From positions 1 to 64,000 of IMG/VR virus record IMGVR_UViG_3300043464_001630: a stretch of 64,000 nt of DNA; one strand, 5' to 3'. This document shows, in pieces, positions 10,174 to 59,180 of this stretch (position 1 is its first letter; each line of letters begins with the position of its first letter). Position numbers and translations under genes: made by a program. The notes under the pieces were generated by a model. It was not told where the DNA came from, did not search any database, and saw nothing but the letters and a program-made list of their open reading frames with translations.

Positions 10174-10776
10174 GTGAGACAAAATTATATTAAGATTTCT
10201 AAGCTAGCTAAAGATCTAGGAGTAACTAAACAAACTCTTTGGAACTGGAAATATGCTGGTGAAGTTGATTTTGTTAAAATAGGTGGGTTAAATTGTGTAA
10301 CTAAAGAAACATACAATAATCTATTAGGAATAGAAAACAAGAAAAAAGAATCTGTTGTGATTTATTGTAGGGTTTCTTCGACGGAAAATAAATCTAATAT
10401 AGAAACACAAAAACAAAGATTGTTAAATTATTGCAATGCAAAAGGTTACAAAGTATCTGATGTGATACAAGAGTTTGGTTCTGGTATCAACGATAAGAGA
10501 CCAAAACTCGAAAAATTATTAAAACAGCAAAATTTTACAAAACTAGTAGTAGAACATAAAGATCGTCTAACAAGAGTAGGATTTAATTATATCAATACAC
10601 TGCTAAACTTCAATCATATTGAGATTGAAGTAGTTAATTCTGTTGATGATGATAGAACTGATTTAATACAAGATTTCATATCAATTATTACATCTTATTG
10701 TGCTAGAATTTACGGCAACAGAAGATCAAAAAGAAAAACTGAACAATTAATAAAGGAGCTTGAATCCAATGAGTAG
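10174..10776 (+). CDS. tnpA: IS607 serine recombinase TnpA
   Basis: N-terminal HTH (LGVTKQTLWNW), IYCRVSS, GSGINDKR, VEHKDRLTR, DLIQDFISIITSYCARIYG. Confidence 0.93.
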   Translation: MRQNYIKISKLAKDLGVTKQTLWNWKYAGEVDFVKIGGLNCVTKETYNNLLGIENKKKESVVIYCRVSSTENKSNIETQKQRLLNYCNAKGYKVSDVIQEFGSGINDKRPKLEKLLKQQNFTKLVVEHKDRLTRVGFNYINTLLNFNHIEIEVVNSVDDDRTDLIQDFISIITSYCARIYGNRRSKRKTEQLIKELESNE

Positions 10777-12355
10777 ATGCACAAAGAGTTATTCTTTCTA
10801 CTCGAAAGATCTTAACATAGGCAAATTCAATCTCTTTTTGAAGAAAGCCGAAGCAGTCAGAGATTATAAGAATGCTTTATCTGTCGAAATTTCATCTAAT
10901 CTCTTGAAGTACACTGAAGTTTCTAAGTTTGATTTCCTTAAAATGTTTGGTACGAAAACTAATTATTTGAATCCTAGCTCATTAATGAGAGGAAACGAAA
11001 TACAAAAAGCTGTAGCGGATGTGTTTGAAGCTTATCAAAATAAAATAACACAAATTAAACAAAAAATGTCTTTCTTTGTTCAAAAAGGAAAAGAGGTAGA
11101 ATTTTACAAAAGAAACACAAAAAATAATAAAAAAGGTGATGTTAGAAGTTATGAAATAAAAACTAAAAATACTCCATTGACAAAAACAATCACATTTCTA
11201 TCTCGTTATGGTTCCGAAAACACACTAGATTATGTCAATAAAAGAGCGAATCAAAATGATGACAAACAAGATTTCTATAAGACACTAAAAATACATATTC
11301 AAAAGTTTGGCTTAGAAAGATTGTCGAAACTTGCTTACAGCAAAAGAACACAAGTTCTAAATAAGTATAATTATCCAATCACATTCACCTCTCTATCTTA
11401 TCGTTCTGCTCTTCAGACGAACGATCCTTTGATTCAAAATTCCAAGAACAAAACATTTTCAAATGGAACTATTTCAATACCAAGCTTTAATGGAAAACAT
11501 ATGTTTGTTCCGACTACATTCAATGTAAAACATCATGGTCATTTGAATCAATATAAATCAAAAGAGTATATAATTTGTATCGAACAAAAGCGAAAAAGAA
11601 TCAGACTGATTACTACAAAAGAAACAGAAGAAACTATTTCTCCAGAAGGAATAAATTATTTAGGTGTTGACACCAACGTCAAACATAATCTATTTGCTAC
11701 TTCAGATGGAATGAATATTGACATGGACAGAGATTTGTTTCATGGTTATATTGCTTTTCTAAAGAAATACCAAGACAAGAAAGAACATACTTCTGGAGAA
11801 GATCAACAATTTGAACTATGGCAAGAACGTGTTCAGTGTATGCTCAAAAAGAAAGCTAGAGAGTTAGTTGATGTGGCTATAGCTTCTGGTAAGAATCATA
11901 TCATCATGGAAGATCTTGGTAACTTTGGTAAATCTTACACTAAATCAGAAGAGTTCGAAGGATTCAAATATTCTAGATTAACACGATTACTCAATCTTTC
12001 TTCTCTAAACAAAATTGTTAAAGGCATTTGTAAGAAGCTTGGTGTTAGACTAACTCTCATTCCTTCTCATTATACATCTCAGTGGTGCTTTGACTGTGGA
12101 CACATAGACAAAGCTAACAGAACCACCCAAGAAATTTTCCAATGTGTTTGTTGCAATGTAACAGCAAATTCAGACTTTCATTCTTCACGAGCCATCCTTA
12201 GGATAGGTTCTTCAGACGTTCTGAAGAGCAATATGCTCGTGATGGATAAATCATTCGATTGGATTCCTAAGAAACTCTCAAAAGGTTTCATAAGAAAACA
12301 ATTGGAAGAAATAATTCCTAAAACAACTTTTCAGTTGAATTGTCAAACTTTATAG
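10760..12355 (+). CDS. tnpB: TnpB RNA-guided RuvC nuclease (long, 531 aa)
   Basis: LGVD (RuvC-I), IMEDL (RuvC-II), YTSQWCFDCGH...CVCC Zn ribbon, NSD (RuvC-III). Confidence 0.88.
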   Translation: MNPMSRCTKSYSFYSKDLNIGKFNLFLKKAEAVRDYKNALSVEISSNLLKYTEVSKFDFLKMFGTKTNYLNPSSLMRGNEIQKAVADVFEAYQNKITQIKQKMSFFVQKGKEVEFYKRNTKNNKKGDVRSYEIKTKNTPLTKTITFLSRYGSENTLDYVNKRANQNDDKQDFYKTLKIHIQKFGLERLSKLAYSKRTQVLNKYNYPITFTSLSYRSALQTNDPLIQNSKNKTFSNGTISIPSFNGKHMFVPTTFNVKHHGHLNQYKSKEYIICIEQKRKRIRLITTKETEETISPEGINYLGVDTNVKHNLFATSDGMNIDMDRDLFHGYIAFLKKYQDKKEHTSGEDQQFELWQERVQCMLKKKARELVDVAIASGKNHIIMEDLGNFGKSYTKSEEFEGFKYSRLTRLLNLSSLNKIVKGICKKLGVRLTLIPSHYTSQWCFDCGHIDKANRTTQEIFQCVCCNVTANSDFHSSRAILRIGSSDVLKSNMLVMDKSFDWIPKKLSKGFIRKQLEEIIPKTTFQLNCQTL

Positions 12356-42465: not shown

Positions 42466-45400
42466 TGTTCCATGTGGAACATTCTCCAACGGAGAGAAGA
42501 GAGGATTCTGGGGAGAGTATAGTGGTTATGTTTAGAATGAATATGTTCTTATGCACATAATGCATAATGATTATTAGATATGCTTATAATGCATAAGAAC
42601 TATTAGATATGCACATAATACATGTGTGTTATTAGGTATGCTTAAATTGCATATTAGTTTCGCTTATCTGGGGTTTTCTCGTGGTTTAGGTCAGACCCTC
42701 CCCCCACCTCAAGGTTAATAAGAATCCTCTACTAATGGAAGGTTTATTTTCACTTTTTTTGGGTTTGTTTAGAAAAGGTCAGACCCTCCCCCCGTACCTC
42801 TAGGTTAGTATGCGATCCAGTATTTTAGCAAGAAAAAAGAAAAATAAAAATAGTGCTAAAGAAAAAAGATTTTCAGTTTTTCCTAAAGAGTTTTTTTCAA
42901 ATGCCTATTAAAAGGAGCCATGCAATTTACAAATTCCATTTGCTTAGAGTTAGCTACCCTTGCCTCTCTCAATCAGTTAGAGAAGCTCGCCGAGCGCCTG
43001 ACTGAATTGCAGCCCTTAGTTAAACAGGGACGCGGAACATGGGGGGAGAATATTGAAAAGATGTTGGCTTTTCTCTCTGACCGAAAGCCCCGCTTCTCCA
43101 TCTTTGCCAAGGGAAACGGAAAACTGCCGTTTGCTGCGTTTTCTGTGCTTCCGCTTGTTTCCTGCCCCGGTTCTGGTGCTTGTAAAAACTGGTGCTATTC
43201 TCTGAAAGCATGGCGATATCCAGCGGCTTTCTTTCGCCAGTTGCAGAACCTAATTCTTTTGATGTCCCCAGAGGGGCGGAAAACTGTCGCAGAGGCATGG
43301 AACAAGCTCCGCAAGGGGGCGCATGTTCGGTTGTACGTTGATGGGGACATTCACTCTCTTGAGATTCTAGAATATTGGCAGAACCTTTGTCGCCAGCGTT
43401 CAGATTTGCAGGTTTATGGGTATTCTAAAAGCTGGGGAATATTCTTGCGTTTCGATGGAGAATGGGCGTCGAACTATACTCTCAACCTTTCAAGCGGTTC
43501 GAAGTTTGTAAACAGCCCTAAAGTAAAAGAACAAATTTCCGCCCTTCCGATTGTGCGGGGTGAGTTTGTGGCTGTTCCCGTGGCTTCGAAGGCTCCAAAG
43601 CGCAACCTTAAAACGGGTCAGCCTCTGAACCCCGCAGCATGGCAGTCTCATAGGTTAGAGGTTCTAGCCGCTGCAAAGAAGCTAGGAATGGGTAAAGTGT
43701 TTGTTTGTCCGGGTTTGTGTGGATTCTGTGCAAACGGAAAACACGCTTGTGGCAATCGTGCATTTAACGGAATTCCGATTGTGATTGGAATCCATTAAAA
43801 TAGTTCTAAAGAATCCTCTATTCTTTGCCGATTAGTATATACCGGAAGGTTCGATCCCTTCCGGTTCACTCAGAAACCCAAAAAACAGCCATGATGCTCA
43901 AAGCCAAAAAATCGAAAAAGTCACAAAAAATTGTAATTGCATTCCCGATTGCAAACACTAATGGTCAAATGGTTTCGATTCATACAACCGTTGGAAAGTA
44001 TTCTTTTATTCTTGATTACTGGGCTGGTGATGCCGTCGAAAACGCTCTCAAGAGAATCGAGGAAGAGAATGTCACCGGAATCGGTTTTACGACAGCAAAC
44101 GGAACACCGATTCAAGTAAGGTTGCTAGATTAGCAGGTTTTAGAGAATCCCCTACTCTTTACGAAGGGCGGGGGATTCTCCGTTGTTCCACATGGAACAT
44201 TATAGGAACAGATAATAGGTTAAACCCTCCCGTCCTTCCTCTAGGTTAATAAGGATTCTCTATTACTACAACAGAAAAGAAAAAAAAGTTTCTGCTAAAG
44301 TTTTCTAGAAACCTGTTACTGATTCTTTGTTCCACATGGAACATTCCAGAATCTAGTGAGTATACAAACCCTCCCGTCACACCTATAGGTTAATAGAGAA
44401 TCCTCTATTCTTACAACCTTTTTCTTTTTTATTTTTCTGCTAAAGTCTTTCACCTTTCTTGCCTATTAGTAGTTATGCCGAAACATTCCTCTGACATTGC
44501 TTACGAGTTGACAAACCTCTTGAAGTTTGAAAGCATGAAAAGCGTTGGCGAATTTAGTGAAGCCTACGTCATCGGATACTTGAGCAGTATCTTGAAGAAT
44601 CTTGCAAAGTATCCTGAGGTTCAGCGTGAACTGGAAAAAGAAGTAGAAAGAATAAAAAAGTACTAAAGACGCTCTGCTGAAAAACCGACTACTCTGTATG
44701 ACTGTAAAACTGATCAACGCCGCAATCAAACACCTCAACCTCGAAATCATCAAAGGAAGCGGATACGTTTATTTTCTTGACTTGACTACTGGATATCAGG
44801 TGGGCGACTCTGTGCATATTGCATACCTCAATCATGTCAGCTTGGATCGGTGGATCGAAGAAGCCGAAGGTGCAAGAAAAGACGAAGAAGTAAAAAAGTT
44901 CTAAAGAATCCTCTACAAATACCGACTACTATATACCAGAAGGTCCAATCCCTTCTGGTTCACTCAGAAACCTTAGTACATTATGGAAAAACTCACCTTG
45001 GAAGAAATCACCCGCATTGCTGAAAAACTGGGAGTCAAGTTGGACGGGAATCCAACGCCAGCGCAGAAAGCCGAAATCGCAAACATACTTGTCACCCTTT
45101 TGGAAGTTGAAGCGAAACTGAAAAAGAACTAAAGTCTCTCCGAGAAAAACCGATTACTATATACCGGAAGGTTCCAGTCCTTCCGGTTCTCAACCCAAAA
45201 ACCAAACTACATTCTATGATCACCAAAAACGAAAACGGCACACTCTCAATCGGCGACATTCAAATCGTTTCTTCTTATAACAAAGAAACAAAGCAGCATA
45301 CCTTCAATCTGCTTAAAGCGGGTTGTGTTCCCGTTCAGCATATCGGGAATCACCTGACGCTCCGAAACAATATCACGAAACTGGTGGAACAAGTAGAAGC

Positions 45401-46291
45401 TACCTACGTTGAGGAAGTGGCCTCAGAAGTGGCCTCAGAATCGTTCAGCGAGACTATTCTGGACATTACAGAATTCGTTCAGATTCCAGTCGACGACAAC
45501 GCCCCCACTTCTGAGTCAGAAGATTATAACCTCTTCAAGGATTATCTAAAGAAATTCTCCGAAGCTACCGGAGAGGAACGGGAGAAATTTGCGGAGATTG
45601 CCAGTCAGATTCTCCTTGGCATGAACATTCAAGCGGTGTAAAGAATCCCCCCGCCACACTCACTAGAGACTCCCCCCTATCTAGTGAGTGTGGTATCTTT
45701 TTCACTTCTCTATTAAAAATGAATTTATAGCATATTCGTTTTTATATCATCGAGTCGTGAGTCAACCAAAAAAATCCCGCTCTCCCCTAAAAACGCTAGG
45801 CTCCTACACACAAGCGTAGGACTCCCACAAAAATAATACGGGGGCGCAAATAGTTCTAAAGAATCCTCTACAGTTGCCGATAGATATAGTGTCAGCGTAG
45901 TAAACCTTAAATTCACTTCTTATGTTCCAAGCAAACCTTGTCAAAGCTGTCTCTCACTACCCGCTCTCCAAGTTGATCCCTGATTCTATCGGAAACGAAA
46001 AAGACGAAGGTCTCTATGACTATTTTATCGACAGTCTTTCCGAAGGACGTATTGTGGGAGCAGGAGCTACTTTTATGCTTCTCGAACCCAAACTGTTCAG
46101 GAAGCACCTAATGAGTGCTCTAGAATTCGGCGAATTCAATCTCGCCGCTCTTGAGATTGAAGATATCCTAAGAACAACTGACACTCTGATTCTCCGCGAC
46201 ATTCACGTTTCATTGGCAGAGTAAAGAAGAAAGAAGTAGTCCCCTATGCTCTACGGAGTGTAGGGGATTCTCTATTGTTCCACATGGAACA
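42466..46291. repeat. Four parS-like 16-bp palindromes TGTTCCAYRTGGAACA (42466, 44184, 44328, 46276)
   Basis: Read directly; one mismatch from the parS palindrome TGTTCCACGTGGAACA. Confidence 0.7.
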
Positions 46292-46670
46292 TTCGGGAAT
46301 AGTAAGATACACTATAAGCATATCTTATATGCATTATGATGTATAAGCATAACTTCTAATAATAATATATAAGAACCTCCGCCCTCCCCCCTCCCTTTCA
46401 GTATATCACACTTGTCAAGCCCCAGTTTTGAGAGACTGGAATAGGCCAAACCCTCCCCCCGCCTCTAGGTTAATAAAGAAACAAGTGGTTTGTGAAGGTT
46501 TATTTTCACTTTTTTTCTGAGCTTTTACAATTCCAGACAGACCCTCCCTTCCGCCTCTAGGTTAGTTTGAAAATAATAGTTCTGTCAATCCCTTTTTTTG
46601 CAGAAAAAAAGAAAAGGTCATACCCTCCCGTCACGCCGATAGGTTAGTCCGCAAAACAGGGGGCAGTCAA
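42695..46670 (-). promoter_or_regulatory. Seven minus-strand units: A-tract, TTGACA-like, N17-18, TAACCT, AGAGG-like, N3-5, GGGAGGGT
   Basis: + strand ACCCTCCC...AGGTTA at 42695, 42783, 44224, 44368, 46450, 46541, 46622. Confidence 0.7.
42920..43798 (+). CDS. Gp88-like Cys-rich protein
   Basis: GNGKL, SCPGSGACKNWCY, RLYVDGDI, YGYSK, CPG.CG.C. Confidence 0.7.
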   Translation: MQFTNSICLELATLASLNQLEKLAERLTELQPLVKQGRGTWGENIEKMLAFLSDRKPRFSIFAKGNGKLPFAAFSVLPLVSCPGSGACKNWCYSLKAWRYPAAFFRQLQNLILLMSPEGRKTVAEAWNKLRKGAHVRLYVDGDIHSLEILEYWQNLCRQRSDLQVYGYSKSWGIFLRFDGEWASNYTLNLSSGSKFVNSPKVKEQISALPIVRGEFVAVPVASKAPKRNLKTGQPLNPAAWQSHRLEVLAAAKKLGMGKVFVCPGLCGFCANGKHACGNRAFNGIPIVIGIH

Positions 46671-47740
46671 ATTTATTTTCATTTATTTTTAACCTGTGTA
46701 AATCGTTGAGAATCATTAACTTACGAAGTTTTCGCGTTTAAAGGCGATTCTAGGGGGGTTTCTACCGTGTCAGCTATGATCACCCTACCGGCAATAGAAA
46801 GGGGATCAGAACGGGATTCTTGGCGATTCCAGAGTGGGTTCCTGTATTAGGTTCCGGTGAGCTTTTTCCCTACCGGCGAACCCTACCGACGAACCGTTGA
46901 AAACTTTTTTGCTAGTGTAACTTTCGGAAATATAGGGACTTATAAAATTATTTAAAAAAAGAGCTTAAGGGATTTGCCATTTCGTTCGAATACTAGGGTA
47001 GGTCAGCGAGATTCCGCTGGCTTGGCCGCGAGAGGCAAGGGAAGTCTCCGCTAGGGCTGGAACCTATGGTTACCAGAGTTGATGGTGCTCTCTGAAGAGG
47101 CTCGCAGAGGAATGTCCGATAGAATACGGGACGGTTCCGGTTGCTCAGGCTAGTACCCTGAGTGGCTACCAGCGAAGGTACACAGTATTTGTGGGGTTTG
47201 TCGCCAGCGTTTTACGGTTACCGAGATAGGGAATCCGAGAATAGAGCGTTGGCAATCAAACACTAATTAAGATTATGAAAATAACAAATGCCGTTTCCGC
47301 CGCTAATTCTAGTGATTTTGTTTATTCGGAAAATGTTAGGTACGTTTTTATCTGTAAAATGATCGAATCCCGAATCTCTTCACGACTTTTTCTGATTGAT
47401 GATTCGAAAGAACAAAAGTTACAGGATATAATTAATGGCGATTGGCGCAAAACCTTGGGATGTATTGATGAGCAGATTAAAAATCTAGAAAAAGAGCGGA
47501 TTCCTTTGGAGAAATGGCTCCGCGACAACGGAGCAAACGACGACGATTTAGACCATAGTTTGTGGTGCGACGACACAGATTGGAGAGCATGGGTAAATGA
47601 GGATTAGGTATTGTGTTCAGCCCCTTACACAATTCGGTGTAGGGGGCGCGGTTATAAGTGTTTTGCTTTCAGCCTTTTGTCAGTCCCGCTGTAGGGCACT
47701 GAGTTCACAAAGGGTTGAATAACAGTACACTAATTAAATT

Positions 47741-49273
47741 ATGACCCCATCAAAGTATCAAACCGCTGCAATCAACTGGATGACAAGCGGAAGCGGAAAC
47801 GCAGTTATTAGCGCAGTAGCAGGAAGCGGAAAGACGACTCTTTTGCTCATGATGCTGAAAGAGTTGTTCAAAGAAGGAAAGTGTCCCTCAGTGGCTTGCC
47901 TAGTGTTTGCGAAGAAAAACCAAGTGGAAATGGACTATAAGCTCAAAAGGGAAGGGATTCCCGCCGAGTCTTATACGGTTCACTCGCTTTGCCTCAGGGC
48001 ATATAGGAAGTTTGTTCCTAACTTCAAACTCGAAGGAAGGAAAGTGAGACTAATCCTCGAAGAAAACCTATCGTCTGAGGACTTTAGTCTCTATGCAACC
48101 GCTTGCGAAAAACTGGTTAAGTTCGCAAAGGACGACGGGGCCGGAATTTTTTGGCCCATTGCGGATGCTGCTCAATGGCAGCGCCTTATGGCGCATCATG
48201 ATGTCGAACTAGAGAACGATGCCACGATGGATCGGGCGATTGAGATTTGTCAGAAAACCTTAGAAGCGAACAATAAAGAGAAAATCTTTATAGATTTCTC
48301 TGATATGATTTATCTTACTCTGTTGAACGGGTACACTTTACCGAAGTTTGACTGGGTACTGGTGGACGAAGCGCAGGATTTAAGTCCCCTTAGACAAGCG
48401 GTTTGCTTTGCTTTGAAGGGAGAAAACACTCGCTTCGTTTTCCCCGGCGATAGAATCCAAGCAGTGTTTGGGTTCACTGGCGCGGATGCGGAGTCTCTGG
48501 ACAATATCAAATCCGCTTACAACGCTACAGAGCTACCGTTGTCAGTGTGTTACCGCTGTTCAAGCTCAGTGGTGAACCACGCAAAGCAATGGAATCCCGT
48601 AATTGAATCAGCACCAAACGCTGAAACGGGAAGCGTTACCGAAATGCCCTACACCGCGCTGACGGAAAAGCCTGAGTCTCTTAACCTTTCGTACAAAGAC
48701 GCGATCCTTTGCCGGACTAATGCGCCTTTGATGCGCACCGCGTTTTCTCTGATCAAAAAGGGAATCCCGTGCAGAATTGAGGGGCGGGACATCGCTCAGG
48801 GGCTCATTAACGTAATCGGAAAATGGAAAGTTAAGACACTGGACGCTCTCGAAAACCGCCTTTCCGATTACTTGGATCGCGAAACGCAAAAGGCTCAGAC
48901 TAAGGGTAATGAGGCTTTGGTAGGCGTCATAACCGATAAGGTGGATTGCATTAGGGCTTGCATGGAAAAGTGCTACCTCGAAGGCAAGACCCGCGTTGAC
49001 GACCTCAAAGCATTGATTGATAGCATGTTCTCGAACGCGGACGATAAGACAACCCGCCGCGACTTGCTCACCCTTTGCTCTGTCCACAAATCAAAGGGGC
49101 TGGAATGGGAACGAGTCTTTCTACTTGGGCGTCAAGACTTTATGCCTTCCAAGTGGGCAAAGAAAGACTGGATGAAGGTTCAGGAAACTAACCTTATCTA
49201 TGTAGCTATCACCCGCGCCAAGAGAGACTTAGTCGAAGTCACCGGAGTGTCTGAGTACCTCAAAGGCAAGTAG
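47741..49273 (+). CDS. UvrD/Rep-like superfamily 1 helicase
   Basis: AVAGSGKT, VDEAQD, GDRIQAVFGFTGA, YRC, ILCRTN, VHKSKGLEW, YVAITRAK. Confidence 0.92.
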   Translation: MTPSKYQTAAINWMTSGSGNAVISAVAGSGKTTLLLMMLKELFKEGKCPSVACLVFAKKNQVEMDYKLKREGIPAESYTVHSLCLRAYRKFVPNFKLEGRKVRLILEENLSSEDFSLYATACEKLVKFAKDDGAGIFWPIADAAQWQRLMAHHDVELENDATMDRAIEICQKTLEANNKEKIFIDFSDMIYLTLLNGYTLPKFDWVLVDEAQDLSPLRQAVCFALKGENTRFVFPGDRIQAVFGFTGADAESLDNIKSAYNATELPLSVCYRCSSSVVNHAKQWNPVIESAPNAETGSVTEMPYTALTEKPESLNLSYKDAILCRTNAPLMRTAFSLIKKGIPCRIEGRDIAQGLINVIGKWKVKTLDALENRLSDYLDRETQKAQTKGNEALVGVITDKVDCIRACMEKCYLEGKTRVDDLKALIDSMFSNADDKTTRRDLLTLCSVHKSKGLEWERVFLLGRQDFMPSKWAKKDWMKVQETNLIYVAITRAKRDLVEVTGVSEYLKGK

Positions 49274-56561: not shown

Positions 56562-57533
56562 ATGATATTTGACGAACAAATTTCCCGTAAACCAAACCAT
56601 TATCCTTGGACAGATAAATTTATCGAAGCCATGCATAATGGTTTCTGGACAGACAAAGAATTTAATTTCAGTTCGGATATTCAAGACTTTAAGGTCAATC
56701 TTTCTGAAAAAGAAAAGGAGATTATTATTAGAACTCTTTCTGCTATCGGTCAAATAGAGATAGCAGTAAAGACATTCTGGGCTAAATTAGGCGAGAATTT
56801 ACCCCATCCTAGCCTCTCTGATCTAGGGTATGTAATGGCTAATGTTGAAGTTATACATAATAATGCCTACGAACGATTAATTTCTGTATTAGGATTAGAG
56901 AATGTATTCGAAGAGAATCTTAAATTAAGCTGGATTGAAGGAAGAGTTAAGTATCTTCGTAAATACACTCACCGCTTCTATAAAGATAGTAAGAAACAAT
57001 ATCTATATGCATTAATTCTTTTCACTTTGTTTGTAGAAAATGTGTCTCTTTTTAGCCAATTCTATATTATTAATTGGTTTGCAAGATACAAAAATGTATT
57101 AAAAGATACCGATCAACAAGTACGTTATACTCGTAATGAAGAAAATATTCATGCTTTAGTAGGTATTAGGATCGTTAATACTATTCGTGAAGAGTATCCA
57201 GAATTGTTTGATGAAGAACTTACGGATAAAATTGTAAAAGAAGCAAAAGAAGCATTTGAATCAGAATCAGCAATTATTGATTGGATGATTAATGGCATTC
57301 AAGAAGAAGGCTTAAATGCAATTACATTGAAGGAATTTGTTAAAGATAGAATTAATAATTCTATGGAACAAATAGGATTTCCTCAAGTCTTTGTTGTAGA
57401 CAAAAATATTTTATCTGCTACTATGTGGTTTCAGGAAGAATTATTGGGCAATAATATGACTGATTTTTTCAAGTCAAAACCAACGGAATACTCTAAAAAA
57501 TCACAATCATTCGACGAAGACGATTTATTTTAA
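56562..57533 (+). CDS. nrdB: Ribonucleotide reductase class I beta subunit
   Basis: EVIHNNAY, VENVSLFSQF, NEENIH, DFF. Confidence 0.93.
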   Translation: MIFDEQISRKPNHYPWTDKFIEAMHNGFWTDKEFNFSSDIQDFKVNLSEKEKEIIIRTLSAIGQIEIAVKTFWAKLGENLPHPSLSDLGYVMANVEVIHNNAYERLISVLGLENVFEENLKLSWIEGRVKYLRKYTHRFYKDSKKQYLYALILFTLFVENVSLFSQFYIINWFARYKNVLKDTDQQVRYTRNEENIHALVGIRIVNTIREEYPELFDEELTDKIVKEAKEAFESESAIIDWMINGIQEEGLNAITLKEFVKDRINNSMEQIGFPQVFVVDKNILSATMWFQEELLGNNMTDFFKSKPTEYSKKSQSFDEDDLF

Positions 57534-57536
57534 ATT

Positions 57537-59180
57537 ATGAGCAATATATATTGGCTAAACAAAGACTCTAGAACTTTCCTAGAGAGAGGGTATCTTCTTA
57601 AAGATGAAACTCCGGAACAACGCATTTTAGATATTGCTAATGCCGCTAAACAATATTTAGGCGAAGATTATTATAATAAATTTATTGAGTATATTTCTAA
57701 AGGCTATTACTCGTTAAGTAGTCCTCTGTGGAGTAATTACGGAAGAGAAAGAGGATTGCCTATTAGTTGTTTTGGATCATATATTCCAGATACTATGGAA
57801 GGTATTCTAGAAAAAGCTGCCGAAGTTGGAATGATGACTAAAGGTGGCGGTGGAACATCTGGATATTTTGGGGATGTTCGTGGAAGAGGAACTGCTATTT
57901 CTTCTGGAGGAGTTTCTACTGGAGCGGTCCATTTCATGGAAATTTACGATACCTTAATGAAGGTAGTTTCTCAGGGAAATGTACGTCGGGGATCGTTTGC
58001 TGCGTATCTTCCAATAGATCATACTGATATCGAAGAATTCTTGAAAATTAAATCAGAAGGAAATCCAATTCAGGATATTTCTATCGGAGTGACTGTATCT
58101 GATGAGTGGATGAAATCGATGTTAGAAGGAGACAAACAGAAAAGAAAAGTATGGGGTGATGTTATCAAAAAACGCTTTGAAAGTGGATATCCATATGTGT
58201 TCTTTTCTGATAATGCAAATAATAATGCTCCTCAAGTTTATAAAGATAAAGGAATGAAAATTCTACACAGTAACTTGTGTTCTGAAATCTTTCTTCCTAA
58301 CAAACAAGACGAATCTTTTGTTTGTAATTTAGCTTCTATGAATCTCGAACAATGGGATGAATGGAAGAATACCGATGCTGTTCAAGTAATGATACATTTT
58401 CTTGATGCTGTCATGACTGAATTTATCGATAAAACCGAAAATGATAAGTACATGCAAGCTCCTAGAAACTTTGCTATTAATCATAGAGCACTAGGATTGG
58501 GTGTATTAGGATGGCATTCTCTTCTTCAAAAGAAGAATATCGCATTCGAAAGTATGAATGCCAAATTTCTAAACGTAGAAGTATGGAAATTTATCAGATC
58601 CGAATCGGATAAGGCTACATGTGATTTGGCTGAAAAATTTGGCGAAGCTCCTTTATTAAAAGGATATGGACGTAGAAATACTACAACATTAGCCGTGGCT
58701 CCTACTACTTCTAGCTCATTTATTCTAGGACAAGTATCTCCTAGTATAGAACCACTTAATAGTAATTATTATGTTCGTGATTTGGCTAAAGGCAAATTTA
58801 CATACAGAAATCCTTATTTAAAATCTTTACTTAGTAGTAAAGATATGGATACTGAAGAAGTATGGAAAAGTATATTAATTCGCGGTGGGTCGGTTCAGCA
58901 CTTAGAATTCTTATCACAAGAAGAAAAGGATGTTTATAAGACTTTTAGTGAAATTAGTCAGAAAGAAATTGTCATTCAAGCCTCACAAAGGCAGAAATAC
59001 ATCGATCAAGGACAAAGTTTAAATTTCATGATTCCGCCGACTACAAAGCCAAAAGAAGTAAACGAACTTATGATTTTTGCTTGGGAAATGGGAATTAAGA
59101 GTTTATACTACCAACGTAGCGCAAACCCAGCCCAAGAGCTTGCCCGAAGTATTCTAAATTGTACAAATTGCGAAGCCTAA
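57537..59180 (+). CDS. nrdA: Ribonucleotide reductase class I alpha subunit (no ATP cone)
   Basis: PISCF, RRGS, SNLCSEI, APTTSSS, DQGQSLN, KSLYY, C-terminal CxxC. Confidence 0.95.
   Translation: MSNIYWLNKDSRTFLERGYLLKDETPEQRILDIANAAKQYLGEDYYNKFIEYISKGYYSLSSPLWSNYGRERGLPISCFGSYIPDTMEGILEKAAEVGMMTKGGGGTSGYFGDVRGRGTAISSGGVSTGAVHFMEIYDTLMKVVSQGNVRRGSFAAYLPIDHTDIEEFLKIKSEGNPIQDISIGVTVSDEWMKSMLEGDKQKRKVWGDVIKKRFESGYPYVFFSDNANNNAPQVYKDKGMKILHSNLCSEIFLPNKQDESFVCNLASMNLEQWDEWKNTDAVQVMIHFLDAVMTEFIDKTENDKYMQAPRNFAINHRALGLGVLGWHSLLQKKNIAFESMNAKFLNVEVWKFIRSESDKATCDLAEKFGEAPLLKGYGRRNTTTLAVAPTTSSSFILGQVSPSIEPLNSNYYVRDLAKGKFTYRNPYLKSLLSSKDMDTEEVWKSILIRGGSVQHLEFLSQEEKDVYKTFSEISQKEIVIQASQRQKYIDQGQSLNFMIPPTTKPKEVNELMIFAWEMGIKSLYYQRSANPAQELARSILNCTNCEA

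What the first reader, a model, noticed from the sequence alone, without database searches (positions are those of the whole stretch)
46995..47274. Roughly 270-nt highly structured GC-rich RNA upstream of the helicase operon
Seen: no ORF of 60 aa or more; helices GGTCAGCG/CGCTGGCT, GCC/GGC, GGTTGCTCAGG/CCTGAGTGGCT and GCCAGCGTTTTA/TAGAGCGTTGGC contain many G-U pairs, indicating + strand RNA-level structure. A degenerate sigma28-like promoter lies at about 46963. Inference: an undescribed large ncRNA or regulatory leader.
Basis: partly seen in the sequence, partly recalled or inferred. Interest (0 to 1): 0.6.

Follow-up and report, generated by a model that had tools for sequence, protein, structure and literature searches.

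The report
Phage helicase-operon structured leader RNA
The flagged stretch is a real, evolutionarily conserved folded RNA at the head of a helicase operon in an uncultured lake-water jumbo phage. It has two parts, a multi-hairpin domain and a hairpin repeated before every gene of the operon, and neither matches any described RNA family.

Summary
Confirmed. The window is the first 64 kb of a 236-kb freshwater jumbo phage.

The region has two modules:
- **Multi-hairpin domain, about 180-200 nt (46990-47188).** It is the short form of a modular RNA of 200-420 nt found at the same position in at least 12 related phage lineages. The long form has 92 pairs, 30 of them compensatory. The short form has 62 pairs, 7 compensatory. 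No shuffle out of 500 reached either value.
- **Irregular hairpin "R1", about 75-95 nt (47192-47265).** It recurs at 47657-47731 before the helicase gene. I found 23 copies in 12 sources (the window and 11 related loci), confined to this operon. In 22 of them an ORF starts 15-33 nt after the main stem, across an A/T-rich linker. Pairing is 98%, with 12 of 15 pairs compensatory and conserved G-U pairs, which points to + strand RNA.

The ORF that follows the domain is interchangeable or absent, but the RNA, R1 and the helicase stay together. Nothing matches Rfam 15, tRNA/tmRNA models or cultured phages.

The most likely role is a cis-acting structured 5' leader, with R1 as a per-gene recognition site for processing or translational control. 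No RNA reads exist, so transcription and mechanism are inferred.

The parts
46964..46994 (+). Promoter-like conserved blocks: CTTAAGGG (46964-46971) and TTCGAATACT (46985-46994). A transcription start would fall near 46995-47000.
   Evidence: Both blocks, at the same spacing, are conserved in L004, L005, L007 and L029. L025, L031 and L027 have TTGCAC/TTGACC, then 16-17 nt, then a -10-like block at the same place. The motif is not enriched in the genome. The promoter function is inferred.
46990..47188 (+). Multi-hairpin RNA domain, short form. Closing helix 46990-46994 with 47184-47188, or alternatively GGTAG 46997-47001 with CTACC 47166-47170.
   Evidence: RNAalifold on window, L029 and L025 gives 62 pairs in 8 helices, 94.6% paired, 7 compensatory pairs, 0 of 500 shuffles as high, and 30-50% paired when the partners are slid. 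It is 97.2% identical to L029, against 89% for the flanks and 74.5% for the helicase gene.
46996..47027 (+).
   Evidence: Kept with different sequence in L025 (TCCGAGC/GCTCGGA), L031 (TAGCAG/CTGCTA) and L010.
47028..47051 (+). P2 hairpin. Its 3' half is homologous to helix H3 of the long form.
   Evidence: 100% paired, with one-sided changes in L025.
47057..47076 (+). P3 hairpin (CTGGAACC..GGTTACCAG).
   Evidence: An A-U pair becomes G-C in L025.
47084..47102 (+). P4 hairpin, the weakest helix.
   Evidence: 88.9% paired with one compensatory pair. The alignment is uncertain here.
47109..47138 (+). P5 hairpin (GGAATGTCCG..CGGGACGGTTCC).
   Evidence: Four compensatory pairs in L025, 100% paired. 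The GGGACGGTTCCGGT block is shared with the long forms L007, L010, L012, L016 and L017.
47139..47180 (+).
   Evidence: The base GGTT/GGCT, the loop and the tail are conserved in L025 and in the distant L027, while the inner stem changes with compensation.
47192..47265 (+). R1 leader hairpin, copy a. Basal helix 47196-47200 with 47257-47261. The apical part is CCGAGATAGGG followed by CCGAG.
   Evidence: Covariance model R1 scores 79.2 bits, E = 2e-16. Across 23 copies it is 98.2% paired, 12 of 15 pairs are compensatory, and 0 of 500 shuffles reach that. z = -3.76. The ATG lies 21 nt after the stem.
47275..47607 (+). orf110, the first gene of the operon. It occupies a variable 'cargo' position.
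   Evidence: No Pfam, PHROG or Atlas assignment. L004 has a 71% identical homologue. Unrelated ORFs sit at this position in L007, L010, L012, L016 and L029, and there is no ORF here in L025 and L005.
47620..47647 (+). Conserved GC-rich hairpin between orf110 and R1 copy b.
   Evidence: Read directly from the sequence. The same hairpin is in L004, L010 and L016. It has no U-tract and the terminator scan did not call it.
47657..47731 (+). R1 leader hairpin, copy b, directly upstream of the helicase gene.
   Evidence: R1 model 70.1 bits, E = 4e-14. z = -5.24 on the + strand and -2.93 on the - strand. The ATG lies 21 nt after the stem.
47741..49273 (+). UvrD/PcrA-like superfamily 1 helicase, 510 aa.
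   Evidence: Pfam UvrD-helicase 2e-21, UvrD_C 2e-15, AAA_19. Homologues range from 88% to 40% identity.

Best explanation
The + strand of window 46990-47265 encodes the structured 5' leader of an early operon (orf110, UvrD-like helicase, and probably orf105). The phage is an uncultured freshwater jumbo phage, and its host is probably a Bacteroidota bacterium (inference).

**Two RNA modules**
- Module 1 is a domain of 7-8 hairpins, about 180-200 nt, closed by a long-range helix. It begins a few bases after a conserved promoter-like pair of blocks. It is the short form of a modular RNA family of 200-420 nt that holds this position in related phages.
- Module 2 (R1) is an irregular hairpin of about 75-95 nt: a basal helix, a 12-bp stem, a 3-4-bp middle helix and a 3-bp top with a conserved loop. 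One copy stands before each gene of the operon. Its base lies 3-22 nt from the start codon, across an A-rich linker without a Shine-Dalgarno sequence.

**Most likely mechanism (inferred, not shown)**
- Control is post-transcriptional and in cis.
- The R1 copies are recognition sites for one trans-acting factor. That factor could be a double-strand-specific RNase that cuts the polycistronic early mRNA between genes, as RNase III does in T7. It could instead be a translational regulator. Either way it would set the stability and translation of each gene together.
- The upstream domain would be a stable structured 5' end of that mRNA. It could serve as a protective or regulatory platform, and cleavage at the first R1 might release it.
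For: **Real and on the + strand**
- No ORF in the region.
- Folding asymmetry between the strands.
- Conserved G-U pairs in R1: pair 24-101 is G-U in 17 copies and G-C in 6; pair 27-98 is U-G in 14 of 23.

**Conserved structure**
- Long form: 92 pairs in 17 helices, 30 compensatory, 94.9% paired against 35-46% when partners are slid.
- Short form: 7 compensatory pairs.
- R1: 12 of 15 pairs compensatory across 23 copies.
- The RNA is the best-conserved segment locally: 97.2% identical to L029, against 89% for the flanks and 74.5% for the helicase gene.

**Leader position**
- In every locus the order is promoter-like blocks, RNA, R1, then optional ORFs each with its own R1, then the helicase, all on one strand.
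- The scan found no terminator between the RNA and the first ORF.
- 22 of 23 R1 copies are followed by an ORF start 15-33 nt after the stem, across a linker that is 60-100% A+T.
- R1 occurs only in this operon: 2 copies in the 236-kb genome and 3 in the 242-kb relative.

**Not tied to a particular protein**
- The ORF after the RNA is unrelated between lineages or absent.

**Translation context**
- Only 12 of 187 ORFs have a Shine-Dalgarno-like core. Initiation therefore depends on an open A-rich leader, which a stable hairpin next to it could gate or insulate (inference).
Against: - No RNA run holds the sequence, so the transcript, its ends and any processing are unobserved.
- I found no conserved alternative pairing, terminator or start-codon sequestration that would give a switching mechanism.
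- The domain is plastic. L031 lacks the 3' module, the window lacks the central 230 nt, L005 keeps only P1, and L014 has R1 but no detectable domain. Whatever the domain does is dispensable or replaceable in some lineages.
- The domain's own folding z-score is only -1.73.
- The short form rests on three distinct sequences plus the diverged L027. The structures were predicted from the same alignments on which the pairs were counted.
- The RNase III or regulator role of R1 rests on analogy and geometry alone.
Confidence: 0.5

Rival explanations
1. An independent trans-acting non-coding RNA. The domain is the functional product, for example an early host-takeover or anti-defence decoy, or a protein-sequestering RNA. 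It would be made from its own promoter or cut from the operon transcript at the first R1. Its position next to the helicase would be incidental.
For: - It is the most conserved segment of the neighbourhood at sequence level, not only in its pairs.
- Long single-stranded or loop motifs are invariant among the long forms.
- The downstream ORF is interchangeable.
- The locus lies in an early region that in relatives also carries SprT-like, DUF932, ART-PolyVal and PcfJ genes. These are typical of injected or anti-defence gene sets (established knowledge, not tested here).
- The size and ornate multi-helix fold recall other phage-borne large RNAs of unknown role.
Against: - No terminator follows the domain.
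- It is never found away from R1 and the helicase operon in any of the 12 lineages.
- Whole modules are lost in some lineages.
- No RNA data.
Confidence: 0.25
2. A processive antitermination leader, working like put of phage HK022 or the EAR element. The nascent RNA domain would modify RNA polymerase so that it reads through the hairpins between the genes of the operon.
For: - It lies directly downstream of promoter-like blocks at the head of an early operon.
- A conserved GC-rich hairpin (47620-47647) and long R1 hairpins lie between the genes and could be pause or termination sites.
Against: - The hairpins between the genes have no U-tracts and were not called as terminators.
- No Rfam antiterminator family matches.
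- The domain is much larger than put, and it is dispensable in L014 and L005, where the helicase still follows R1.
Confidence: 0.1
3. A ligand-sensing riboswitch, with the domain as aptamer and R1 as expression platform.
For: - 5' leader position.
- A multi-helix domain closed by a long-range helix next to a hairpin near the start codon.
Against: - There is no universally conserved core. Different lineages keep different modules.
- R1 also works as a stand-alone unit before genes that have no domain upstream.
- No alternative aptamer/platform pairing is conserved (inspection).
- No Rfam riboswitch matches.
- A replication helicase is not a typical riboswitch-controlled gene (established knowledge).
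Confidence: 0.06
4. A single-stranded DNA or replication element. The hairpins would act at the DNA level, or as an R-loop primer RNA, at an origin beside the helicase gene.
For: - It lies next to a replication-type helicase.
- Iteron-like direct repeats and A/T-rich runs lie 300-2800 nt upstream.
- Covariation alone cannot tell RNA from same-strand ssDNA.
Against: - Cumulative GC skew shows no switch here and simply follows gene orientation.
- R1 keeps a fixed distance to start codons, which is a translational rather than replicative geometry.
- The upstream repeats look like promoter/terminator cassettes around small ORFs and recur between other small ORFs.
Confidence: 0.04
5. In this particular phage the domain is a decaying remnant of the long form with no remaining function.
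For: - It lacks about 230 nt present in the long form.
- L005 shows a further-decayed state.
- The folding z-score is modest.
Against: - The same short form is 97% identical in L029.
- It is kept with compensatory changes in L025 (helicase 61% identical) and L027 (51%).
- It is identical in four lake metagenomes from different studies.
Confidence: 0.05

Closest known systems
RNase III processing hairpins of the phage T7 early operon (R0.3, R0.5, R1, R1.1, R1.3)
   Same: A family of similar irregular hairpins of about 60-90 nt, one between each pair of genes of a phage early polycistronic mRNA, just upstream of the next gene. R1 stacks about 20-27 bp with internal loops, which is enough duplex for RNase III (structure; T7 facts from established knowledge).
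   Different: No sequence similarity. The host is probably a Bacteroidota bacterium. Cleavage is untested. R1 has a conserved apical hairpin and a CCGAG bulge that suggest a specific protein partner.
PeSL (promoter-early stem-loop) cassettes of T4-type phages
   Same: Repeated regulatory cassettes containing a stem-loop flank small, variable ORFs in a hyperplastic early region, and module boundaries coincide with them. Here the ORF between R1 copies differs between lineages. The window's domain is L029-like while its R1a is L007-like at 90% identity.
   Different: PeSLs are DNA-level units made of a sigma70 early promoter plus a terminator-like stem-loop. R1 shows G-U pairs and + strand asymmetry, which indicate RNA. 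It has no clear promoter hexamers and keeps a fixed distance to the start codon.
Large ornate phage-associated RNAs of unknown function (ROOL, GOLLD)
   Same: Phage-borne, hundreds of nucleotides, many helices with covariation, no assigned biochemical role.
   Different: No match to their Rfam models, or to any other family, even at E up to 10. This RNA is smaller, sits in a fixed 5'-leader position, shows modular domain loss, and is restricted to one clade of freshwater jumbo phages.
Cis-acting phage leader RNAs such as HK022 put, or the translational operators of T4 genes 32 and 43
   Same: Structured RNA at the 5' end of a phage early or replication operon. T4 replication proteins repress their own mRNAs through leader structures (established knowledge).
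   Different: The size and fold are unrelated. The binding partner is unknown. The same operator-like hairpin is repeated before unrelated genes.

Membership tests
Any Rfam 15 family (4227 models, including riboswitches, RNase P, 6S, tmRNA, group I/II introns, ROOL, GOLLD, HEARO, OLE, raiA, EAR) | Covariance-model score at or above the family's gathering score | tested here: not met
   No match at gathering score in the whole window or in 7 related loci. At E up to 10 the region and the long form in L007 gave only four weak matches, all well below gathering score and none on the RNA or R1 (rli27, snoR113 and Ysr197 in the window, CRISPR-DR17 in L007).
tRNA / tmRNA | Cloverleaf, or tRNA-like domain plus tag reading frame, found by ARAGORN | tested here: not met
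   No genes found in the window, the whole genome or the related loci.
Self-splicing intron (group I or II) | Interrupts a gene, with flanking exons that join into one reading frame, and has a conserved catalytic core | tested here: not met
   There is no ORF for more than 800 nt upstream. Unrelated ORFs, or the helicase start itself, lie downstream. No intron model matches.
Riboswitch | An aptamer core conserved in all members | tested here: not met
   The long, short and 3'-less forms keep different modules, and L005 keeps only P1.
Riboswitch | An expression platform with mutually exclusive pairing (terminator or start-site sequestration) | tested here: inconclusive
   No terminator was called. 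No conserved alternative pairing was seen by inspection. The base of R1 lies 3-22 nt from the AUG but does not cover it.
Riboswitch | Specific ligand binding | not testable with these tools
   Needs in-line probing, SHAPE or ITC.
T7-type RNase III processing site | An irregular duplex of about two helical turns located between genes of one mRNA | tested here: met
   R1 has 3-5 basal pairs, a 12-bp stem, a 3-4-bp middle helix and a 3-bp top. One copy precedes each gene.
T7-type RNase III processing site | Cleavage by RNase III in vivo or in vitro | not testable with these tools
   No RNA reads are available.
PeSL cassette (T4-type phages) | Cassettes flank variable small ORFs and mark recombination boundaries | tested here: met
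   ORFs between R1 copies are unrelated between lineages. Identity profiles are mosaic, with breakpoints at the junction between the domain and R1.
PeSL cassette (T4-type phages) | Contains a host sigma70-type early promoter | tested here: inconclusive
   There are no consensus hexamers within R1. A conserved T-rich TTTG block on its 5' flank has variable spacing.
   The motif is present and is better conserved in relatives. There are 7 genome matches against 5-15 in shuffles. L025, L031 and L027 show sigma70-like TTGCAC/TTGACC, then 16-17 nt, then an extended -10 at the same place.

The most novel reading that the evidence does not exclude
The domain is a new class of modular, phage-encoded functional RNA of 200-420 nt. 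It would be released from the early helicase-operon transcript by cleavage at the first R1 hairpin and would act in trans during host takeover, for example as a decoy or scaffold for a host or phage protein. R1 would define a previously unknown per-gene control system for translation or processing in hosts that do not use Shine-Dalgarno sequences.
Probability: 0.2. Interest if true: 0.8.

Novelty: new member of a known kind. Interest (0 to 1): 0.55.

Why it matters
Jumbo phages of freshwater Bacteroidota are uncultured, and almost nothing is known about how they regulate their genes.

This locus offers two well-supported RNA elements that could be synthesised and tested directly:
- a modular multi-helix RNA with no described relatives;
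- a hairpin repeated at a fixed distance before each start codon of a replication-helicase operon.

Because the phage, and probably its host, translate without Shine-Dalgarno sequences, R1 is a concrete candidate for studying how translation or mRNA processing is controlled in such systems.

The mosaic pattern, with a variable ORF between R1 copies, also suggests that the hairpins act as recombination joints that let early genes be swapped.

The clade is narrow, with about a dozen lineages, and the function is unknown. This is a solid new RNA motif, not a demonstrated new mechanism.

Tried and rejected
**Searches that found nothing**
- blastn of the region, and of the long form, against cultured phages and plasmids: no match.
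- Related loci in IMG/VR found through the helicase or orf110: only two distant, high-GC phages without the RNA.
- Exact-motif scans for the long form. IMG/VR gave only L017. The JGI metagenome contigs gave 7 chance hits. The GTDB genomes gave 5 chance hits, of which the two I read lie inside FtsH coding sequence.
- Short-form motif in IMG/VR: none.
- Paralogues of the domain elsewhere in the genome: none.

**Ideas tested and dropped**
- Origin of replication: cumulative GC skew shows no switch.
- N4-like hairpin promoters: the largest ORF is 1742 aa, so there is no giant virion RNA polymerase, and R1 is far larger than N4 hairpins.
- Sigma28 promoter class: no enrichment.
- A second structured RNA at 46700-46900: conserved but z = +0.11.
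- The GC-rich spot at genome position 79351: it is Gly/Pro-rich coding sequence, not RNA.

**Data that were not informative**
- Public runs: 16 DNA holders, mostly lake water metagenomes, and no RNA run. Contigs from four runs are identical over the RNA, so they add no variation.
- orf110: no family by Pfam, PHROGs or Atlas.
- A published catalogue of candidate structured RNAs from IMG/VR does not mention helicase- or jumbo-phage-linked motifs in its text. I did not check its motif files.

Full report
**Context**

The window is the first 64 kb of a 236,391-bp IMG/VR virus record that CheckV rates as complete. Genome GC is 33.7%, with a 41% island at 40-50 kb. The same DNA occurs mostly in lake-water metagenomes, from 15 studies, and no RNA run holds it. 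The genome has no tRNA or tmRNA genes. Only 12 of 187 ORFs have a Shine-Dalgarno-like core. Together with the low GC and the habitat, this suggests a Bacteroidota host, but that is an inference.

Around the finding lie, in order:
- a GP88-family gene (42920-43798);
- about 3 kb of small ORFs and dense repeats;
- the flagged region;
- a 110-aa ORF with no family (47275-47607);
- a UvrD/PcrA-like helicase (47741-49273).

**Observation**

No ORF of 40 aa or more lies on either strand from 46450 to 47274. The 280 nt fold to -104.3 kcal/mol on the + strand (z = -3.26) and -77.5 on the - strand (z = -1.84).

Split into parts, the 200-nt domain has z = -1.73. The 3' hairpin has z = -3.76 on the + strand and -1.53 on the - strand. 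The conserved 200 nt just upstream are not structured, with z = +0.11. One sequence alone therefore gives a moderate signal, and the case rests on homologues.

**Homologues**

The helicase has a graded series of relatives from 88% to 40% identity. Their contigs are syntenic pieces of 220-255-kb phages. nhmmer and alignments find the RNA at the same position in these:

| Form | Loci | Notes |
|---|---|---|
| Long, about 370-420 nt | L007, L012, L016, L010, L017, L004 | |
| Short, as in the window | L029 (97.2% identical), L025 (74%), L027 | L027 is diverged and was recognised by the same P6 loop and tail |
| 5' and central parts only | L031 | Lacks the 3' module |
| Remnant | L005 | Keeps only P1 |
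| None detected | L014 | Has R1 only |

The window differs from the long form by two deletions that together remove about 230 nt. Against L029 the RNA is 97.2% identical, while the flanks are 89% and the helicase gene 74.5%.

**Covariation**

- Long form: the RNAalifold consensus has 92 pairs in 17 helices. 94.9% of cells are paired, against 35-46% when the 3' partners are slid. 30 pairs have compensatory changes, against 12.7 in shuffles, and 0 of 500 shuffles are as high.
- Short form (window, L029, L025): 62 pairs in 8 helices, 94.6% paired, 7 compensatory pairs including four in P5, and 0 of 500 shuffles as high.
- P1 is also kept with different sequence in L025, L031 and L010.

Caveats: there are few sequences, the structures were derived from the same alignments, and P4 and the exact closing helix are uncertain.

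**The R1 hairpin**

A covariance model built from 11 copies finds 23 copies in 12 sources, the window and 11 related loci. It finds only 2 in the whole 236-kb genome (47185-47290 and 47650-47758) and only 3 in the 242-kb relative, all inside the helicase operon.

Across the copies, 98.2% of cells are paired and 12 of 15 pairs are compensatory, with 0 of 500 shuffles as high. Two positions are predominantly G-U, which fits RNA on the + strand. A basal helix extends the stem. By inspection, a 3-4-bp middle helix also covaries.

In 22 of 23 copies an ORF starts 15-33 nt after the main stem, through a linker that is 60-100% A+T. The ORF between the domain and the helicase differs between lineages or is absent. 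The window's R1a is 90% identical to that of L007, although its domain is L029-like. The modules therefore recombine at these joints.

**Promoter**

Two conserved blocks precede the RNA: CTTAAGGG, and 14-16 nt later GCCGAATACT (TTCGAATACT in the window). They would place a transcription start at about 46995-47000. More distant loci have TTGCAC or TTGACC, then 16-17 nt, then an extended -10 at the same place. The sigma28-like reading is not supported by enrichment in the genome. I treat this as a promoter of unassigned class, by inference.

**What it is not**

- No Rfam 15 family matches at gathering score. At E up to 10, the stretches searched (window 46200-47500 and L007 2800-4100) gave only four weak matches outside the RNA and R1.
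- No tRNA or tmRNA.
- Not an intron: there are no exons.
- No similarity in cultured phages or plasmids.
- No GC-skew sign of an origin of replication.
- No giant N4-type RNA polymerase.

**Mechanism**

Shown here: conserved + strand structure, a fixed position at the head of the operon, an R1 copy before every gene at a fixed distance from the start codon, restriction of R1 to this operon, and independence from the identity of the next ORF.

Inferred: the region is the structured 5' leader of the early helicase operon. R1 copies would be recognition sites for one factor, either RNase III-type processing between genes as in T7, or a translational regulator. The domain would be a stable 5' platform that may be released by cleavage at R1a. 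I put about 0.5 on this cis model.

| Rival reading | Probability |
|---|---|
| Released trans-acting RNA | 0.25 |
| put-like antitermination | 0.1 |
| Riboswitch | 0.06 |
| Non-functional remnant | 0.05 |
| DNA-level or origin role | 0.04 |

**Novelty and verdict**

This is a genuine, undescribed structured RNA locus: a new RNA family plus a new repeated leader hairpin. It is confined to a narrow clade of uncultured freshwater jumbo phages, and its function is not yet known. It is a new member of the known kind "phage structured leader or non-coding RNA". Interest is 0.55. If the domain proves to be a released trans-acting RNA, or R1 a new per-gene control system for hosts without Shine-Dalgarno sequences, it would deserve about 0.8.

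Noticed in passing
window 44134-46700: Dense repeat families. One is ACCCTCCC..CC[GT]CTAGGTTAAT, at 44204-44248, 44348-44392, 46440-46496, 46551-46588 and 46602-46670. Another is a hairpin followed by the palindrome TTGTTCCACATGGAACATT, at 44148-44208, 44327-44352 and 46240-46300. The same cassettes occur in L029, L005, L007 and, in both orientations, L025. They look like early promoter/terminator cassettes around small variable ORFs.
   Followed up: partly
window 44636-45190: Three copies of a unit of about 230 nt, spaced 228-238 nt apart (repeat families D4, D5, D8). This may be a tandemly duplicated small-ORF module.
   Followed up: no
window 10760-12355: A 531-aa ORF hits PHROG transposase families 506 and 12300. 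It could be a TnpB/OrfB-like gene, possibly with its own guide RNA at the 3' end. It is not similar to the RNA studied here.
   Followed up: no
window 56562-59180: The ribonucleotide reductase large subunit ORF (57537-59180) matches only profile positions 206-794 of 975. A 323-aa ORF lies directly upstream. The gene may be split, or interrupted by an intein or intron.
   Followed up: no
window 47620-47647: A conserved GC-rich 11-bp hairpin with a 6-nt loop and no U-tract lies between orf110 and the second R1 copy. It is also present before the R1b copies in L004, L010 and L016.
   Followed up: partly
window 46700-46900: A non-coding stretch that is 73-78% identical to L007 and L004 and contains invariant blocks, but has no excess folding energy (z = +0.11). 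It is probably a DNA-level regulatory sequence. About 340 nt of it are absent from L029.
   Followed up: partly
whole genome G000 (window = 1-64000): The 236-kb phage has no tRNA or tmRNA genes. Only 6% of its ORFs have a Shine-Dalgarno-like core. The 40-50-kb segment is a GC island (41% against 33.7%).
   Followed up: partly
L027 4640-4895 (helicase 51% identical): A GC-rich structured region (z = -2.49) sits upstream of R1 and the helicase. It shares the P6 loop CUAGUAC and the tail GGCUACCAGCG with the window's RNA, but nhmmer missed it. The family is therefore wider than sequence searches show.
   Followed up: partly
L014 7843-7942: A weak R1-like hit (E = 2e-4) lies downstream of the helicase operon with no ORF start behind it. 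It could be a degenerate copy or a chance match.
   Followed up: no
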